A stretch of 64,000 nt of DNA from Octopus bimaculoides (Eukaryota): the NCBI RefSeq assembly GCF_001194135.2, contig NC_069005.1, positions 22,565,699 through 22,629,698 on the forward strand. Reading direction: 5' to 3'. Below the pieces are notes generated by a model. It saw only the letters and a list, made by a program, of their open reading frames with translations, made no database searches and was not told where the DNA came from. Made by a program: the position numbers and the translations under genes. Position 1 is the first letter of the stretch; every line of letters starts with the position of its first letter. This document shows positions 511 to 48,698 of the stretch, piece by piece.

Positions 511-924
511 TACAATTTGTGGCTCTGTGCCTATATTAAGAATCATCATCATCATCATCCTCACCATTCTAATCATCATCATAGCAGTCACCATAAACAT
601 CGCCGTCGTCATTATACATCCATTACACCATATTGGCATCAGTTAGTGTCACTACCTAGTGTAGTTTATTATCAGAACAGAGAAAACTGCTCGTCTTTAG
701 CATGAACGTTACAGTTGCATACCCTCCCTATCAGCAACTACTTTTAAGCATGGATTAGGTGGATTGTATCATGGCACCAGCACTAGGGTGGTTGCCAGTG
801 AGCAAAACTCATTATTAAAGGCCTCAGATTTGATCCTCTGCAACCCCAGGACTTTTTGTTAAAAATTACGGTGGCTTGCCGATATTAATAGAGCAACATT
901 TATTATGCCTTGCATTATTTAGTC

Positions 925-1085
925 ACAGCCCTTTCAGTTCCAAGTTCAGGCTCAATCCAGGTCAACTTTGCCTTTCATCTTTCCAGGACCAACCAAATAA
1001 AATACCAGTTAAGCATCAGGGTCAATAAAATCAACTGCTCCTCTTCCCTCAATTTCTGACTTTGTTCCTATGTTAGAAATTATTA
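925..1085 (+). mobile_element. SINE-B fragment ending in an (ATT)n tail
   Basis: ggtcaactttgcctttcatc...ataccagtt...gggtcaataaaatcaact...cctatgttagaaattattat. Confidence 0.7.
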
Positions 1086-1199
1086 TGGTTATTATTATAA
1101 TTATTATTATTATTATTATTATTGATGAAAGACTGAGATATGTGGTGCATTGCTGTACACAAGTAGATACACTCACCACAACAGAATTGATATCCTAAA

Positions 1200-1530
1200 A
1201 CCAAGGTGTAACGTAAAAAGCACTGGTGTTGGTACCACATAAAAAAACACTAGTGATGGTGGTATGCAAAAAGCCCTGGTGCTTGTTCCACATAAAAATC
1301 CCTAAGGTTGGTGGGTTCCACATAAAAAGTACTGGTGCTAGTCCCACGTAAAAAGCACTGGTCATGGTGCCATGTAAAAAGCAGCCTGTACACTTTGCAA
1401 AAAAAGGGCATCCAGCTGTAGAAAGCAAGCCAAAACACTATGAAACCTGATGCAGCCCCTGGCCTTGCTATCAAGCTGTCCAACCCATACCAGCATGGGA
1501 AACAGACATTTTATCATCATCATCATCATT
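1200..1530 (+). mobile_element. RTE LINE 3' UTR with ~27-31 bp tandem units
   Basis: About six units like aaaagcactggtgctggtgccacgtaa, then aagggcatccagctgtagaa...ccaacccataccagcatgg, the same terminus as the RTE at 4205-4977. Confidence 0.75.
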
Positions 1531-2843
1531 AGCAATAGTGTTCAAATCTTGCATGCTGAGGGTCACTCTATAATCAACTGTACCCTCCCTCCAAAAACAG
1601 TAGCCTAGTTCTGATGTTAAATAACAATTATTACTCATTTAGTTCATTTCATTTCTCTGAAAGAATATTGATTGACTGCCAGAGATTCATACAAGGCAAA
1701 GAGGAAACTGATAGATTCACACCTTTCCCTCCATGGCATGGCAGCATCGACAGAGGTGGGGTACAGAAGTAGCTCCTTATCATTTGGAATGCTTCCTCAA
1801 AGAAGTCAGTTAGATATGAAAACTTTCTATTCTGTATGGCTATTGGCTATTACAGCACTATGCGTGGCGTTATGCTATTACGTAAATGTATGCTTGGATG
1901 AATAAATAAAATGTGATCATATGACACACCAGTTGAATGTAAGTAAACTCTACCCTCGTCCTCTAACCCCATCCTCATCTCATACACACTGCTGTATTTA
2001 TGTAGTAGTAAGATACAAGCCAAGGTTTATTCCATGTCTGCAACAAGAGAAACTATCACAAACATAGAAGATAGACCAATAGATTAAAAAGAGATGGTTA
2101 AATTCTGAGATAGATAGACAAGCAGAGAGATAAATAGAGAAAGAAATCGATAGACAGTTATATACACAGAACAATTATATATATGTATGTATGTATGTTT
2201 GTGTGAATTATATATATACACACACATATACATAGACACGCACAGATATATTGACATTCATTTACATCAGAAATATACATATGAAATACATCATATATAC
2301 ACAATGTATATATGATGTGTGTATGTGTGTGTGATTATTCTAAATATATACACACGCGCACACACACACACACACACACNNNNNNNNNNNNNNNNNNNNN
2401 NNNNNNNNNNNNNNNNNNNNNNNNNNNNNNNNNNNNNNNNNNNNNNNNNNNNNNNNNNNNNNNNNNNNNNNNNNNNNNNATATACACATATGAGAGATTT
2501 TAGAGATTTCTCCGATTTGATTGAGGCCATGCTAGGGCACAACCTTCAAGCATTTAGTTGATCATATTGACTCCAGCACTAATTTTGAGTCTGGTACATA
2601 TTTTATCATTCTCTACCTGTCAAATCGCTAATGCCCATCCATAGAGGGACACTGGCATAAACGAAACTGGGTTTCTATTTTTTTTCTTTTTAATGAAAAC
2701 TGACACAGACTTTAAAGAAAGGTTTGGTGTAAATACAAGAAATAGAACTCAATATGCAAGAGTGTGTGTATGTGTGTGTGTGTGTGTTATAGATTGATAG
2801 ATACATAGCTAGATACATACAGAGACAGACATAGATATTACAA

Positions 2844-3263
2844 GTGCAGGCATGACAGTATGGTTAAAAAGCTAACTTCCCAGCCATGTGGTCTTGGGTT
2901 CAGTCCTGCTGTGCAGCACTTAGGGCAAGTGTCTTCTACAAGAATTCTGGGCCAACCAAAGTTGTGAGAGGATTTGATAGGTGGAAACTGAAAGATGCTC
3001 CTCATGTGTGTGTGTGTGGGGGGGGGTACTCTTGGCTTGACACTACATGGTGGTCATAAATGAGCATTACTGTCATACAAAGCAATGCTGTCTGTTTCTA
3101 GGCTTCCTTGGGAAACATGTCTGGCCATAGGGAAATGTTCCCTTGTTTGGAAACTGGTGAGGGTTGGCAAAAGGAAGGGCATCCAGCCATAGAATATCTG
3201 CCTTAACGAGGTGAAAACCTGAGCCATACAAGCAAAGAAAAGTGGACATTAATGACGATAATG
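2844..3263 (+). mobile_element. SINE-A (tRNA head plus CORE-like domain), long variant with RTE-like 3' tail
   Basis: Head gcaggcatgacagtatggtt...ggttcagtcc; CORE-like cacttagggcaagtgtcttcta; (GT)n; tail ggaagggcatccagccatagaa...ggacattaatgacgataatga. Confidence 0.75.
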
Positions 3264-3269
3264 ATTTCG

Positions 3270-3351
<82 letters not shown>

Positions 3352-3390
3352 CATACACACACACACACACACACGTACGTGTGTGTGTGC

Positions 3391-3639
3391 TGGGACGCTG
3401 CCTTAAAAACTTTTTAGTCAAACAAATTGACCCCGGTACATATTTTTTTTTATTTAAGCCTGGTACTTATTCTATTGGTCTCTTTTTGCCAAACCACTAA
3501 GTCATGAGGATGTAAATACATTAACACTGGTTGTCAAGTGGTGGTGGTGGGGATAAACACAGACACAGAGACACACACACACATACACATCACCATAACT
3601 TTCATTTAATGTCCATTTTCTATACTGGCATGGGTTGGA

Positions 3640-3676
<37 letters not shown>

Positions 3677-3838
3677 TACGAACAAGCTTCTTTCAGTTTC
3701 TCTCTACCAAATCCACTCACAAGGAGTTGATTGACTCAGAGCTATATTAGAAGACACTTGCTCATGAGGCCACAGAGTGGCAGTCAACCCAAATATGTTG
3801 ATTGGGAAGCAAAGGTCTTAACCACACAGCTATGCCTG
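3391..3838 (-). mobile_element. SINE-A, near full length
   Basis: Reverse complement of head (ccacacagctatgcctg; gaagacacttgctcatg) and tail (cctggtacttattctattggtctcttttgcc). Confidence 0.75.
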
Positions 3839-4204
3839 AGCAAATACATATATAGATGGTTCTTCATTGCTCTTTGATGACAAGAATTCAGGTGTTTGAT
3901 CAACTGAGTTACCTGCTCAATGAATTAGCAATAAATTTGCATTCTGCAAACACATGCAGTAAGTCTCAAACATAATCAGTATCACATGGTATGTGACAAG
4001 GAAGACTGTGATTTGTCACAAGCATAATATGGGTGAATAATTAAACAGTTTTATTCACAAGCACAAGGAATCTTAAGCATATAATCATTTTCTATTATCT
4101 CAGGTTGACCCATTTTTTGTGAGTGAAATTGCGTTAGCAGAAAATGAAAAGAAGCCCATCAAATCATATGTGCAATTTCTTATATGTTTCTGTGTCTGTC
4201 TGTA

Positions 4205-4944
4205 CCAGCGCAAGAGAGACGATTGCGCTGGTATGGACATGTGGTGAGAATGGATGAGGATAGCTGCGTGAAAAAGTGCCACACCCTAACAGTTGAGGGA
4301 ACCCATGGAAGAGGTAGGCCCAGGAAGACCTGGGCTGAGGTGGTGAGGCAAGACCTTCGTACATTGGGCCTCACCGAGGCGATGACTACTGACCGGCACC
4401 TTTGGAAATGTGCTGTGCGTGAGAAGACCCGGCAAGCCAAGTAAGATCGTTGCCAGTGCCCCTGGACTGGCTCTTGTGCGGGTGGCACATAAGATGCACC
4501 ATTTTGAGCGTGGCCGTTGCCAGTACCGCCTGACTGGCTTCCGTAGGATTTTCGAGCGAGATCGTTGCCAGTGCCCCTGGACTGGCTTNNNNNNNNNNNN
4601 NNNNNNNNNNNNNNNNNNNNNNNNNNNNNNNNNNNNNNNNNNNNNNNNNNNNNNNNNNNNNNNNNNNNNNNNNNNNNNNNNNNNNNNNNNNNNNNNNNNN
4701 NNNNNNNNNNNNNNNNNNNNNNNNNNNNNNNNNNGCGTGGCCGTTGCCAGTATCGCCTGACTGGCCTTCGTGCAGGTGACACGTAAAAGTACCTACTACA
4801 CTCTCTGAGTGGTTGACGTTAGGAAGGGCATCCAGTTGTAGAAACTCTGCCAAATTTAGATTGGAGCCTGGTTTTGCTATCCGGTTTCACCAGTCCTCAG
4901 TCAAGTCGTCCAACCCATGCTAGCATGGAAAGCGGACGTTAAAC

Positions 4945-4988: not shown

Positions 4989-5320
4989 ATGCAGACATGA
5001 CTGTGTGGTAAGGAGTTTGCTTCCCAACCACATGGTTCCGGGTTCAGTCCTGCTGTGAGGCACTTTGGGCAAGTGTCTTCTACAATAGCTCTGGGCTGAC
5101 CAAAGCCATGCGAGTGGATTTGGTAAATGGAAACTGAAAGAATCTCGTGTGTATGTGTTTGTCCACCACCACTGCTTAGCAACTGGTGTTGGTTAATTTA
5201 CATCCCTATGGCTTAGCAGTTTGGCAAGAGACTGACAGAATAAGTATCAGGCTTAAAAGAAAATATGTACTGGGGGAGGGGGGGGGTTCTTTTGACTACA
5301 ATTCTTCAAGGCAGTGACCC
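4989..5320 (+). mobile_element. SINE-A, full length
   Basis: gcagacatgactgtgtggtaagg...ttccgggttcagtcc...ctttgggcaagtgtcttctac...gactgacagaataagtatcagg. Confidence 0.85.
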
Positions 5321-13805: not shown

Positions 13806-14091
13806 NNNNNNNNNNNNNNNNNNNNNNNNNNNNNNNNNNNNNNNNNNNNNNNNNNNNNNNNNNNNNNNNNNNNNNNNNNNNNNNNNNNNNNNNNNNNNNN
13901 NNNNNNNNNNNNNNNNNNNNNNNNNNNNNNNNNNNNNNNNNNNNNNNNNNNNNNNNNNNNNNNNNNNNNNNNNNNNNNNNNNNNNNNNNNNNNNNNNNNN
14001 NNNNNNNNNNNNNNNNNNNNNNNNNNNNNNNNTTTTTTGAAGTGTGGAGGAGAATTAGGAAATATTTAAAAAATGGTAAAACCTCTCTTAC

Positions 14092-14165
14092 CAAAGTGGG
14101 TTACTAGAAAATATTCGAAAAGATATGCTTACCTGCAAAATAAGGAAAAAGCATAACATTAGATA
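14092..14165 (-). other. Candidate recursive splice site (3'SS abutting 5'SS) with possible 41-nt RS-exon
   Basis: Minus strand reads tatctaat-gttatgctttttccttattttgcag|GTAAGC (junction 14133/14132), with a second donor ttg|GTAAGA after 14092. Confidence 0.4.
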
Positions 14166-14228
14166 CAGAAGAACGAAAAATGACATTTCGTAATGAAAAC
14201 ATCAAATATTTAAAACAACAACAACAAC

Positions 14229-14274
<46 letters not shown>

Positions 14275-15024
14275 TATACATATATGGTTTGTGAGCAACA
14301 CATTCCAATAGTGTGTGTGTGTGTGTGTATTGAATAGGTACCAGACTGAACAGATCAAAAATAAGAACAAGAGTTGATATGACAGACTAAAACCCTGAAA
14401 AGTGATGCCCCATCAGTTTGTAGTTCAATGACCAAAACCCATAAAAGAATAAATTAACTTAGACATTGTGCGTAAAGAGAGATTAGCTTGTCTTTCAAAT
14501 ATGCTAGATTGAAATCATGACTATGTTCAAATTTAATCTTTTTAATTTTTCATATTTCTCCATTAGTCCTTTAAGTTGGAACAATAACAGTGTGTGTGTT
14601 TGTGTGTCAGTGAGATCAAGGAGATTCACTGGTTGTTGTCTCCTCTGTATACTGCACTCAACTGTGTGATCCATCTCGAATAATTATATATAATGATGGC
14701 TAATGTTCTACAATGTCACAGAGAAAAAAAGGTAAAGACTTGGAATAGACTGATGAGAAGGACAAAGAAAGAAGGCAGGACAAGGTAGGAATGAGTGAAT
14801 GAAAGAAAGAAAGAAATGGTAATGAAGAACAAAGGAAAGAATGAATGAAGGAGGATAACAACAGAATGAATGAAGACAACAAAGGGACATAGAAATAAAA
14901 TGAAGAATAATAAAAATGGAAAAGCAAAAACTGAAGATCAAAAACAAGAGAATAAAAGAACAAAGAAATAGGGTATTTAAAAAAACAAAAGAAAGAAGGA
15001 ATGAGTAAGCAAACAAAATAAAGA

Positions 15025-15380
15025 AAACTCGCTGTGCAACCAGATGGTTTTGGGTTCAATCTCACAGTACAACACCTTGGGCAAGTGCCTTCTACTATAG
15101 ACATTGGCTGACCAAAGCCTTGTGATTGAATTTGGTAGATACAAACTGTGTGGAATCTTGTCATGCATGCCTTTTTGTGTCTGTGTTTGCTGATTCCATC
15201 ACTTGACAACTGGTGTTGGTTTGTTTACATATTTATGACTTAGCAGTTCAGCAAAAAAGACCAATAGAATAAGTACCAGACTTTTACAACAAAAAAAATA
15301 TGTATTGAGGTCAATTAAAACCCTTCAAAGCAATGCTCTAGCATGGCCACATTCTAATGACTGAAGCAAGTAAATGATAA
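15025..15380 (+). mobile_element. SINE-A
   Basis: ggttcaatctcacagtacaacaccttgggcaagtgcc...gaataagtaccag...gcatggccacattctaatgactgaagcaag. Confidence 0.8.
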
Positions 15381-15931
15381 GAACAACAAAAGACAATATA
15401 CGTAAATAATACCAAAAAATAAACTGTCCTGAATAAGTTGCAAAAACAGGAAGAAAACCTCAATCAAACTTCACTCTATTGTTGTAAAACAAATCACACT
15501 GGACAATACAGTCAGGGGTTCAATACAACAGCATGATCCTGACTGGAATACCTTTGAACATAGGTATTCTGCTTGGTCAGGGCTGACCTGGGGCTAAACA
15601 ACAGTGACCAAAATAGGAATGGGATGGGGGGATACTGATTTTAGAAATCATGCATTGTTGATGTTATTTAGTGACAGACCAGCTGTGACTATCCAATGTA
15701 GGTGTATCTAGGAATACATTGTCTAATGTGTTATTTGTTGCTGTTAATAAGTCCCCAGTTCAGCCCCAACCCAAAATTACACATGTTTCAAGGTAAAAAA
15801 AAGTAGAGTAAATGATAGAATACGAAGTAAATTTTTCCCTAAGTATTTCAATTAATTTTTATTTTAATAAAAATTTTGAAATATCTCTAACTGTATATAT
15901 TACAGGTAGAAGGCAAAAAAGAAACAACCAG

Positions 15932-42689: not shown

Positions 42690-43929
42690 TCGCCATACGT
42701 TTACACCACTCATTTTTTTAATTTGTTATTTTTTTCATTTTCAGATACCCAAAAGATGCCATTGACAAAAGAACAATGAACTGAGATCATATTGATGGCC
42801 ATGTCTGGAAGTAGTCGCAAGATTGCAGCAGAATTTAATAGAAAACATGGAACCAACATAACACACGATACCGTTGCAAAACTTATGTTAAAGTTTAAAA
42901 AAACTGGATCTGTTAAAGATCAAAGAAGAAGTGGTAGACCACATACAGCAATCGATGAAAACACAACAGTTAGAGTTTTTGCATCAATAACATGGAGCCC
43001 CTGTAGAAGTACACGAAGGCATCTGGAAATGTCTGATCCAACCACTGATGCACTTGAATAACATAATGAGGTGGGGCTCCATCTTGCGGGAAGTAAACCA
43101 GAAAGTTACCGTTTAACAGTGATGGGAAAATTTCTTGCAACATGTTGAGATACTTTTTGGCATTAAGATTTCCATTAACAAAAATTGGGCCAATGACTTT
43201 TGTCACCCCATATCCCAACCCAAGCCATCACTTTATCAGCACCTTGCATCTTTGTTGCAATCATCCAGTGAGAGTTAGCATTGCTCCAATAACGCATGTT
43301 TTGGCTATTAACCTCTCCATTGACGTAAAAGTTAGCTTTGTCAGTAAACAAGATCTTAGTTGAAAAGTTTGCGTCATCATTCAATTTACTTGATGCCCAT
43401 TCACAAAATTCCAGTTGTCTATCTGGGTCATCTTCACTTATATGCTGCAGCGTCTGCGGTTTGTACGGATGCCACTTATTTGATTTTAAAATGCGTGTGA
43501 TACTCTGTTTACTGACTCCAATTTCAGCAGCACGGAATCATGATATTGCCAGAAAGATGGCAAAAGGTCATCGAACAAAATGGAAAACATATAATATTGG
43601 TAGGCATGGTCCAATTGAGTGGCCTCCTCAATCTCCTGATCTTACCCCTCTTGATTTCTATCTTTGGGGGCATTTGAAAGGCATGGTGTATCACGAAAAG
43701 ATAAAAGATATAAATCATTTGAAGGAACGCATTACGAAATCATTTGCACAAGTATCACCAGATGTGCTATTATGAGTTCACAATGAATGGGGTAAACGTA
43801 TAGCAATGTGTATTCAAAACAATGGTGACCATATAGAGCCGGTTAAATAAAAAAAACTGTTCTTATAAGCTGTTTCTTATTAAAAAAATAAACTGTTTCT
43901 ATGTATGGTGACTTTAGAATCACCGTGTA
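42690..43929 (+). mobile_element. DD41D (rosa-type) Tc1/mariner transposon with internal inversion
   Basis: Plus strand N-terminus MPLTKEQ*TEII...KFKKTGSVKDQRRSGRP...SPCRSTRR (42756-43020). Minus strand middle ...ILFTDKANFYVNGEVNSQN...QDGAPPHY...LDQTFPD (43533 to 43021). Plus strand C-terminus IGRHGPIEWPPQSPDLTPLDFYLWG...GDHIEPVK* (43596-43850). Restored D-to-D spacing is ~41. 3' TIR ...ttagaatcaccgtg|TA; 5' TIR not found. Confidence 0.9.
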
Positions 43930-45360: not shown

Positions 45361-45915
45361 GTAATTTCAGTTTTTTAGTGTGAAATAAAAGTCGTTTTTT
45401 TTTTTTTTCATACAAAGAATGAATGTTAATCAATTATATGCTTTCCATTTTGTTCGATGACCTTTTGCCATCTTTCTGGCAACGTCATGATTCCTTGCTC
45501 ATAGAACTTCTGGTCCTTATCAGCCAAAAACTGAAACAAGTGCAATTTCAGGTCATCATCATTATTGTCAGTTTTACCATTCAAAGAATTTTGCAAACTT
45601 TGAAATAAATGGTAATCTGATGCTGCAAGGTCAGGGCTATATGGTGGATGTGACATCACTTCCAACCAAGTTCCAATAATTTTTCACAAATTAGCAAAGA
45701 CATGTGTGGTCTAGTGTTGTCATGATGGAACATGATGACTTTACAGTTTGCTGATTCTGGACGTTTTTCTTTGATTGCTTCCTCCAGTTTCATTAGTTGT
45801 TGACAGTAAACATCTGAATTGACCATTTGGTTCCTTGGAAGCAACTTAAAACACACAACATTTTTGTAATCCCACCAAATTGACAACAGGACCTTTTTTT
45901 GATGCAATTCAACTG
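45361..45915 (-). mobile_element. D,D34D mariner transposase, C-terminal half (decayed)
   Basis: LLSIWWDYKNVV...FHHDNTRPH...LELGW / EVMSHPPYSPDLAASDYHLFQSLQNSL...LPERWQKVIEQNGKHIID; TIR remnant gtaatttcagtttt beside a gap. Confidence 0.92.
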
Positions 45916-46419
45916 GTCTGAACATAAAACAAGTAGAATATTCAGGCCAGATATGACTGGTTTAAATGCTAATGGTGATATTTCATACATAAGATAGCAT
46001 GAAATTTTGATGGAAGATTTTAATTTTGATAATTTTAAAACATAGACTCACAGGCAGTCTCAGTCATGTTGGTATCAGAAAGTTAGTTAATGGGAAAAAT
46101 TCACCGAGTTGTTTTTTTTTTCATATGTGTATTTTAATTTAAAAGATAGTTATTGGAGAAGAAAATACATACTGAGCCTATTTAACCAACAGGCCTCATA
46201 TGCTAAAAGAAATATATTTTTTTGGAAGGAATGGTATTAAATAAGTAAGTCATTGTGTAGTAATATTCACTTGTGAAAGCCATGGAATTGCTAGTTTATT
46301 AATGAGAAAATCACAGAAATATTCCACTGTCATCTGTGCACACCTGAATACTGGCCAACATTGCTCATCGATTTAAGGCAATACAGAATAATTTAGATTA
46401 TAAATATAACAAATCTTTA

Positions 46420-48285: not shown

Positions 48286-48698
48286 GCTGTGTGGGGAGAA
48301 GCTTGCTTCCCAATCACATGATTTCCAGTTCAGTCCAACTGTGCGACACCCTGGGCAAGTGTCTTCTACTATAGCCTCAGGCCAACCAAAGCCTTGTGAG
48401 TGGATTTAGTAAATGGAAACTGAAAGAAGCTCATCATGTATGTATGTGTACACATACACACACATACGTGTGCACACACACATGTGTGTGTGTATCTGTG
48501 CCACCACCTCTGCTTGACAACTGGTGTTTGTTTACATCCCTGTAACTTAGCAGTTCAGCAAAAGAAACCAACAAAATAACTACTGGGCTTGAAGAGAAAA
48601 TAAGTACTGGGGTCGAATCATTCAACTAGAAATACTCCAATACAGTGCCCCTACATGGCCATAGTCTAATGACTGAAATAAGTAAAAGATAGAAGATA
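48286..48698 (+). mobile_element. SINE-A, full length
   Basis: gctgtgtggggagaagcttgcttccc...ccctgggcaagtgtcttctactatagcc...catggccatagtctaatgactgaaataagtaaaag. Confidence 0.88.

What the first reader, a model, noticed from the sequence alone, without database searches (positions are those of the whole stretch)
14092..14165. Candidate recursive splice site (ratchet point) with RS-exon in a putative giant intron
Seen on the minus strand: branch-like tctaat about 26 nt upstream, tract gctttttccttattttg, CAG, then immediately GTAAGC (junction 14133/14132). A second donor TTG|GTAAGA lies 41 nt later. The site is in non-TE sequence. Established: Drosophila ratchet points are 3'SS-AG|GT-5'SS, and vertebrate recursive sites are followed by short RS-exons with a competing donor. 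Inference: a minus-strand gene with a very long intron may be spliced recursively here. I do not know of this being described in cephalopods.
Basis: partly seen in the sequence, partly recalled or inferred. Interest (0 to 1): 0.7.

Follow-up and report, generated by a model that had tools for sequence, protein, structure and literature searches.

The report
Unverified recursive-splice-like motif in octopus DNA
The splice-acceptor/splice-donor motif is really there and is the best of its kind in the window. A genome this size should hold hundreds to thousands of such motifs by chance, and nothing available here shows that it is transcribed, conserved or used, so it remains an untested candidate.

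Summary
On the minus strand there is a CTAAT branch-like site 26 nt upstream, a T-rich tract, then CAG|GTAAGC (junction 14133/14132). A second donor, TTG|GTAAGA, lies 41 nt later.

It is the top-scoring of 392 AGGT sites in the window. About 0.02-0.1 such sites are expected per 64 kb, and about 0.002-0.013 when the downstream donor is also required. In a genome of about 2.7 Gb that is roughly 700-4,000 chance sites, or 90-550 with the donor.

The anatomy fits published ratchet point and cryptic RS-exon features: a tandem acceptor|donor, a short out-of-frame exon and a competing donor. The defining evidence could not be obtained: sense-strand position in a long intron, a conserved core, and splicing intermediates.

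The window looks like Octopus DNA. It is rich in transposon remnants, has 11 assembly gaps and shows no detectable coding exon. A T>A excess on the minus strand in 16 of 16 bins is compatible with minus-strand transcription but does not prove it. The site lies in a 1-kb pyrimidine-rich block beside microsatellites, 58 nt from an assembly gap.

Verdict: a plausible but unverified candidate, most likely a chance decoy motif. P(real recursive site) is about 0.2. Interest is low to moderate.

The parts
14158..14163 (-). Branch-point-like tctaat. CTAAT fits yUnAy, with the candidate branch A at 14159, 26 nt upstream of the acceptor G.
   Evidence: Sequence read. No AG lies between it and the acceptor.
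14136..14152 (-). Polypyrimidine tract gctttttccttattttg. Of the 20 nt before the AG, 16 are pyrimidines.
   Evidence: Acceptor score 8.12, rank 20 of 7465 AG sites.
14133..14135 (-). Acceptor CAG. The junction falls after 14133.
14127..14132 (-). Juxtaposed donor GTAAGC. Positions +1 to +5 match the donor consensus and +6 is C. This would be the regenerated 5' splice site of a ratchet point.
   Evidence: The intron-side donor score is 4.07, rank 126 of 7318 GT sites. With an upstream exon ending CAG or AAG the full score would be 8.3 or 7.4.
14092..14132 (-). Putative cryptic RS-exon or pseudo-exon of 41 nt. Its length is not a multiple of 3, and two of three frames have stops.
   Evidence: It has no protein homology.
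14086..14091 (-). Second donor, TTG|GTAAGA.
   Evidence: Full donor score 2.75, rank 193 of 7318.
14033..15036 (-). Context: a 1-kb pyrimidine-rich block (T 44.7%, C 18.8% on the minus strand). In it, 27% of 20-mers have >=16 pyrimidines, against 3.8% for this strand window-wide. It is unique within the window.
14205..14330 (.). Context: compound microsatellite just upstream of the site in minus sense, reading (ATT)n(GTT)n ... (CA)n.
   Evidence: The AAT x15 array is at 14229-14274.
13806..14032 (.). Context: assembly gap of 227 N, starting 58 nt downstream (minus sense) of the GT of the second donor.

Best explanation
This is most likely a fortuitous juxtaposition of an acceptor-like and a donor-like sequence, that is, a decoy splice site or pseudo-exon. 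It sits in a T-rich, microsatellite-flanked, exon-free and transposon-rich stretch of Octopus non-coding DNA.

Shown: the motif exists and is strong. It lies in a pyrimidine-rich kilobase. No coding exon is detectable in the 64 kb.

Inferred: the pyrimidine tract reflects regional composition, and the GTAAG after the AG is a coincidence of about 1 in 1,000. Given about 20 equally strong acceptor-like AG sites per window, spread evenly over both strands, that coincidence will occur many hundreds of times in a genome of this size. If the region is transcribed in minus sense, U2AF/U2 and U1 could bind the site. It would then act at most as an occasional cryptic site with no dedicated role.
For: AGGTAAG is not enriched: 5 copies were found against my hand estimate of about 7 from base composition. 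Twenty AG sites score at least as well as this acceptor, 10 on each strand. Pseudo-exon-like acceptor/donor pairs are equally common on the two strands, 15 and 15. The expectation of 0.016-0.135 composite sites per 64 kb extrapolates to about 700-4,000 per ~2.7 Gb, or about 90-550 with a downstream donor. The site lies in a 1-kb block where 27% of 20-mers are >=80% pyrimidine, next to microsatellites. No exon, gene model or homologue was detected in the window, and there was no Rfam or tRNA hit.
Against: Within this window the site is a clear outlier: joint score 12.19 against 8.78 for the next, z about 3.7, p about 0.02-0.1. Every accessory feature of a ratchet point is present together: a branch site at -26, an AG-free zone, a 41-nt out-of-frame interval and a competing GTAAG donor (PMC8605326). 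The minus strand carries the T>A excess seen on the coding strand of introns in mammals and Drosophila. The site is therefore plausibly on a sense strand.
Confidence: 0.62

Rival explanations
1. This is a genuine recursive splice site (ratchet point) with a cryptic 41-nt RS-exon, inside a very long intron of a minus-strand gene. The upstream exon is first spliced to 14132 by exon definition of the 41-nt interval, which uses the acceptor at 14133 and the donor at 14091. The regenerated donor (exon end + GTAAGC) then outcompetes TTG|GTAAGA, so the RS-exon is removed together with the rest of the intron.
For: The anatomy is complete and strong. It fits the published description: a tandem acceptor|donor, a cryptic exon of about 50 nt, an out-of-frame length and a downstream donor (PMC8605326). 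With a typical exon end (CAG or AAG) the regenerated donor would score 8.3 or 7.4, against 2.75 for the RS-exon donor. That is the relationship expected for skipping. The 64-kb window has no detectable exon. It also shows T>A on the minus strand in 16 of 16 bins, which is compatible with a giant minus-strand intron.
Against: There is no evidence of transcription, of a host gene, of conservation or of intermediates. The chance background genome-wide is in the hundreds to thousands. The T>A skew could come from replication or transposon content, and it is not calibrated for octopus. Recursive splicing has not been reported in any cephalopod in the searched literature, so the number of true sites is unknown.
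Confidence: 0.2
2. This is an ordinary exon start. The acceptor at 14133 and the donor at 14091 bound a real 41-nt exon that happens to begin with GTAAGC. It could be constitutive, an alternative or poison cassette, a UTR exon or a lncRNA exon.
For: Both splice sites are strong and correctly spaced for exon definition, and one reading frame is open.
Against: Six-frame pieces of the locus have no homologue in 5.8 billion proteins and no Pfam match. The 41-nt length shifts the reading frame. An exon starting with a near-consensus donor would be prone to self-removal. No neighbouring exons were detectable.
Confidence: 0.12
3. The motif belongs to a low-copy transposable element or another repeat family, so it is an inherited feature of a repeat consensus.
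For: The window is full of repeats. One SINE-like unit 900 nt away (15037-15390) has about 19 partial copies in the window. Mariner remnants are present (Pfam PF01359), and other reverse-transcriptase-related and transposase-like fragments.
Against: There is no second copy of 14033-15036 in the window at blastn word size 9, E 1e-3, and no similarity to transposon proteins.
Confidence: 0.05

Closest known systems
Drosophila intronic ratchet points with cryptic RS-exons (Hatton 1998; Burnette 2005; Duff 2015; Joseph 2018; Joseph and Lai 2021, PMC8605326; Pai 2018, PMC6110457)
   Same: A long pyrimidine tract followed by CAG|GTAAG. A short downstream interval (41 nt here, about 50 nt typical) that is out of frame and ends in a second donor. 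The regenerated donor is potentially stronger than the RS-exon donor.
   Different: Fly ratchet points are defined by ultraconservation of the acceptor|donor core, by residence in the longest ~3% of introns, and by saw-tooth, junction and lariat evidence. None of these could be tested here. Donor position +6 is C rather than the consensus T. The fly genome is about 20 times smaller, so motif-only prediction is far more specific there.
Vertebrate recursive splicing via RS-exons in long neuronal genes (Sibley 2015; Blazquez 2018, as summarised in PMC8605326)
   Same: An AG|GT site followed by a short exon whose donor competes with the regenerated donor. A large, repeat-rich genome with long introns.
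   Different: This illustrates the low predictive value of the motif alone in a genome of this size.
Intronic pseudo-exons / decoy splice-site pairs
   Same: A good acceptor and a good donor at exon-like spacing in non-coding DNA, with no coding potential. This window has 15 such pairs on each strand.
   Different: This one additionally has a donor placed directly at the acceptor, which is about 1,000-fold rarer.

Membership tests
Recursive splice site / ratchet point | Juxtaposed strong 3' splice site and 5' splice site around AG|GT | tested here: met
   (sequence); best of 392 AGGT sites, with the acceptor in the top 0.27% of AG sites and the donor in the top 1.7% of GT sites.
Recursive splice site / ratchet point | Lies on the sense strand inside a very long intron of a transcribed gene | tested here: inconclusive
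   No exon or gene was found in the 64 kb and no annotation was reachable. The minus strand shows T>A in 16 of 16 bins, which agrees with a coding-strand skew but is not specific to it.
Recursive splice site / ratchet point | Short cryptic RS-exon with its own downstream donor (exon definition) | tested here: met
   The interval is 41 nt and ends TTG|GTAAGA. The donor ranks 193 of 7318. About 13% of minus-strand positions have such a donor 25-100 nt downstream by chance.
Recursive splice site / ratchet point | RS-exon is non-coding or out of frame, so that inclusion would be deleterious | tested here: met
   41 nt is not a multiple of 3 and two frames have stops. There is no homology.
Recursive splice site / ratchet point | The regenerated donor outcompetes the RS-exon donor | tested here: inconclusive
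   This depends on the unknown last 3 nt of the upstream exon: 8.3 or 7.4 with CAG or AAG, against 2.75 for the second donor.
Recursive splice site / ratchet point | Strong evolutionary conservation confined to the acceptor|donor core | not testable with these tools
   No cephalopod genomic DNA was reachable. The protein-based fishing, contig look-ups and a metagenome 23-mer scan all returned nothing.
Recursive splice site / ratchet point | Splicing intermediates: saw-tooth coverage, exon-to-site junction reads, lariats | not testable with these tools
   No RNA-seq data are available.
Ordinary coding cassette exon | Protein homology, or a frame-preserving length | tested here: not met
   The length is 41 nt. 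There are no homologues and no Pfam match.
Transposable-element-derived sequence | Multiple copies, or similarity to transposon proteins | tested here: inconclusive
   There is no other copy in the window and no similarity to transposon proteins. A genome-wide copy number could not be obtained.

The most novel reading that the evidence does not exclude
The site is a functional ratchet point with a cryptic 41-nt RS-exon in a giant intron of an octopus gene. That would be the first recursive splice site described in a cephalopod, or in any lophotrochozoan. It would show that the exon-definition mechanism of recursive splicing shared by flies and vertebrates also operates in the long introns of cephalopod genes.
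Probability: 0.2. Interest if true: 0.5.

Novelty: new member of a known kind. Interest (0 to 1): 0.25.

Why it matters
Recursive splicing is documented in insects and vertebrates and is thought to be mechanistically unified across them (PMC8605326). Cephalopods independently evolved large, repeat-rich genomes and complex nervous systems. Evidence that they also subdivide giant introns would extend the phylogenetic range of the mechanism and bear on how long neuronal genes are processed accurately. A single motif cannot show that. The value of this finding is as a concrete coordinate to check in total RNA-seq, and as a prompt for a genome-wide sense-versus-antisense motif test in octopus.

Tried and rejected
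(1) I tried to fish orthologous or annotated DNA through the protein collection. A six-frame query of 14033-14785 gave 0 hits. Exact look-ups of the 169-aa ORF next to the site and of the Octopus UniRef hit P0001 found nothing on record.

(2) I looked for exons. Thirteen transposon-like ORFs gave 5 hits, all transposon-related or gene-model chimeras. The 90 most protein-like non-repeat ORFs of >=40 aa gave 0 hits.

(3) A metagenome scan for a 23-mer spanning the junction gave 0 hits.

(4) Rfam (gathering thresholds) and ARAGORN over the whole window found nothing.

(5) Literature searches for recursive splicing in cephalopods or molluscs found no relevant report. One search call failed on a term-length rule.

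(6) MaxEntScan could not be run because no model files were available. I used generic splice-site matrices entered from memory, and only for ranking sites within this window.

(7) I considered and set aside the idea that the pyrimidine tract is simply part of the adjacent microsatellite. The tract lies outside the repeat arrays, although it is inside a 1-kb pyrimidine-rich block.

Full report
OBSERVATION. On the minus strand the sequence reads ...ttctgtatctaatgttatgctttttccttattttgcag|GTAAGCATATCTTTTCGAATATTTTCTAGTAACCCACTTTG|GTAAGAGAGG. The tctaat is at 14163-14158, and its candidate branch A (14159) is 26 nt from the acceptor G. The pyrimidine tract is at 14152-14136 and CAG at 14135-14133. 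The junction is 14133/14132, followed by GTAAGC at 14132-14127. A second donor TTG|GTAAGA has its GT at 14091-14090, so the interval between the two donors is 41 nt. No AG occurs in the >=60 nt upstream of the acceptor. One frame of the 41 nt is open and the other two carry stops.

IS IT MORE THAN CHANCE? AGGTAAG occurs five times on the two strands. My hand estimate from base composition is about seven, so the heptamer itself is not enriched. Only this copy has a pyrimidine-rich upstream tract, 16 of 20, against at most 11 of 20 for the others.

I ranked all sites with generic acceptor and donor matrices. The frequencies were entered from memory, so I used them only for ranking within the window. 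The site is the best of 392 AGGT sites, with a joint score of 12.19 against 8.78 for the runner-up. Its acceptor ranks 20th of 7465 AG dinucleotides. Its intron-side donor ranks 126th of 7318 GT dinucleotides.

The expected number of sites this good per 64-kb window depends on the null model. It is 0.016 assuming independence, 0.044 from a normal-tail fit to the AGGT score distribution, and 0.035-0.135 in Markov-chain simulations of a simpler definition. About 13% of minus-strand positions have a donor at least as good as the second one 25-100 nt downstream. The full arrangement therefore has an expectation of about 0.002-0.013 per window.

Locally that is unusual. The genome size of about 2.7 Gb is my recollection for Octopus bimaculoides and was not a tool result. 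At that size there are about 42,000 such windows, so chance alone predicts roughly 700-4,000 composite sites and 90-550 with a downstream donor. Acceptor-like AG sites of this strength are common (20 in the window) and evenly split between strands, 10 and 10. Pseudo-exon-like acceptor/donor pairs are also evenly split, 15 and 15.

SURROUNDINGS. The window is a draft eukaryotic assembly of about 36% G+C with 11 N-gaps. One gap (13806-14032) starts only 58 nt past the second donor. Immediately upstream of the site, in minus sense, lies a compound microsatellite that includes (AAT)15 at 14229-14274.

The site sits in a 1-kb block (14033-15036) that is 63.5% pyrimidine on the minus strand. In that block 27% of 20-mers have at least 16 pyrimidines, against 3.8% for that strand window-wide. 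A good pyrimidine tract is therefore partly a regional property and not something specific to this AG. The block has no second copy in the window. A SINE-like unit at 15037-15390 has about 19 partial copies.

No ORF longer than about 170 aa exists outside the gaps. A mariner transposase remnant at 45429-45961 (minus strand) is confirmed by Pfam PF01359, E = 2.8e-19. Other transposase-like, hAT-like and LINE-tail ORFs are recognisable by eye. Of these, only the query containing the LINE tail found database relatives, which were reverse-transcriptase proteins.

The best hit of that search is an Octopus bimaculoides UniRef gene model. It contains a 44-residue LINE-tail segment that differs at one residue from the window ORF at 4148-4441.

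IS THERE A HOST GENE? I could not find one. Six-frame pieces around the site have no relative among 5.8 billion proteins. The 90 most protein-like, non-repetitive ORFs of >=40 aa from both strands also have none. Look-ups of encoding contigs returned nothing, so no annotation or orthologous DNA could be reached. Rfam and ARAGORN found nothing. The window is therefore either one very long intron or intergenic DNA.

One indirect clue favours minus-strand transcription. In unique, non-low-complexity sequence the minus strand has more T than A in all 16 of 16 4-kb bins, with a mean skew of +6.6%. It also has slightly more G than C, +2.7% overall and positive in 10 of 16 bins. An excess of T over A on the coding strand of introns is reported for mammals (PMC2927911) and for Drosophila (PMC5786239). 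I could not calibrate this for octopus. Replication-associated skew and transposon-orientation bias are alternative causes.

COMPARISON WITH KNOWN RECURSIVE SITES. Joseph and Lai (PMC8605326) describe Drosophila ratchet points as tandem acceptor|donor pairs within long introns. Their acceptor|donor cores are ultraconserved. Each is followed by a short cryptic RS-exon of about 50 nt that is poorly conserved, generally out of frame, and ends in its own donor. The regenerated donor normally wins a competition with that donor. Pai et al. (PMC6110457) show that real sites have strong motifs and about twice the conservation of control AGGT motifs.

The present site meets every feature that can be read from sequence alone. 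The motif is strong. The 41-nt interval is out of frame and ends in a GTAAG donor. If the upstream exon ends in CAG or AAG, the regenerated donor would score 8.3 or 7.4, against 2.75 for the second donor. The defining features that need other data are untested: sense-strand position in a long intron, core conservation, and saw-tooth, junction or lariat evidence. I therefore do not file it as a member of the family. It only looks as though it could work like one.

WEIGHING. True recursive sites all lie on sense strands of long introns, whereas chance motifs are spread over the whole genome. The exon-free window and the T>A skew therefore raise the odds somewhat. The number of true sites in octopus is unknown. 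By analogy it could be about ten, as among the stringently accepted mammalian sites, or a few hundred, as in flies. The chance background for the full arrangement is about 90-550. That puts the probability of a real recursive site at roughly 5-40%, and I adopt 0.2.

I give an ordinary or poison 41-nt exon about 0.12. A repeat-derived motif gets about 0.05. A functionless chance decoy, possibly used occasionally as a cryptic site if transcribed, gets about 0.6.

NOVELTY AND INTEREST. No paper in the searched library links recursive splicing with cephalopods or molluscs. A validated site would be the first in that clade. It would also be an expected extension of a mechanism already regarded as shared across metazoans, so it would count as a new member of a known kind. 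As it stands, the finding is a well-formed but single, motif-only candidate, and I score its interest at 0.25.

Noticed in passing
window 1-64000, minus strand: T exceeds A on the minus strand in all 16 of 16 4-kb bins of unique, non-low-complexity DNA (mean +6.6%). G exceeds C by +2.7%. This is compatible with transcription of the whole window on the minus strand, or with a replication-associated skew.
   Followed up: partly
window 15037-15390, with about 19 partial copies elsewhere (e.g. 34025-34265, 5025-5275, 48311-48691, 3425-3544): An abundant SINE-like repeat family at 64-82% identity between copies. It has no tRNA-like head detectable by ARAGORN and no Rfam match.
   Followed up: partly
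window 4148-4441 (+) and protein P0001: The LINE-tail ORF (…QERRLRWYGHVVRMDEDSCVKKCHTLTVEGTHGRGRPRKTWAEV…) recurs inside an Octopus bimaculoides UniRef model named 'Helicase C-terminal domain-containing protein', with one mismatch in 44 residues. That model probably contains an exonised or mis-annotated retrotransposon fragment.
   Followed up: partly
window 42780-43772 (both strands) and 45429-45961 (-): Mariner/Tc1-like transposase remnants. The element at 45.4-46.0 kb matches Pfam PF01359 (E = 2.8e-19). At 42.8-43.8 kb, transposase-like ORFs occur on both strands and overlap, which suggests nested or inverted copies. Pfam gave only weak HTH hits there.
   Followed up: partly
window 44702/44701, minus strand: A second perfect CAG|GTAAGT juxtaposition, but with a weak pyrimidine tract (11 of 20), lying between the mariner remnants. 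It illustrates the chance background.
   Followed up: no
window 27053-27901 (+): Three consecutive ORF pieces that look by eye like a hAT-type or GTF2IRD2-like transposase. They had no Pfam hit at E <= 0.01 and no database hit.
   Followed up: partly
window 13806-14032 and ten other N-runs (10-705 nt): Frequent assembly gaps. The one at 13806-14032 hides whatever follows the second donor beyond 58 nt.
   Followed up: no
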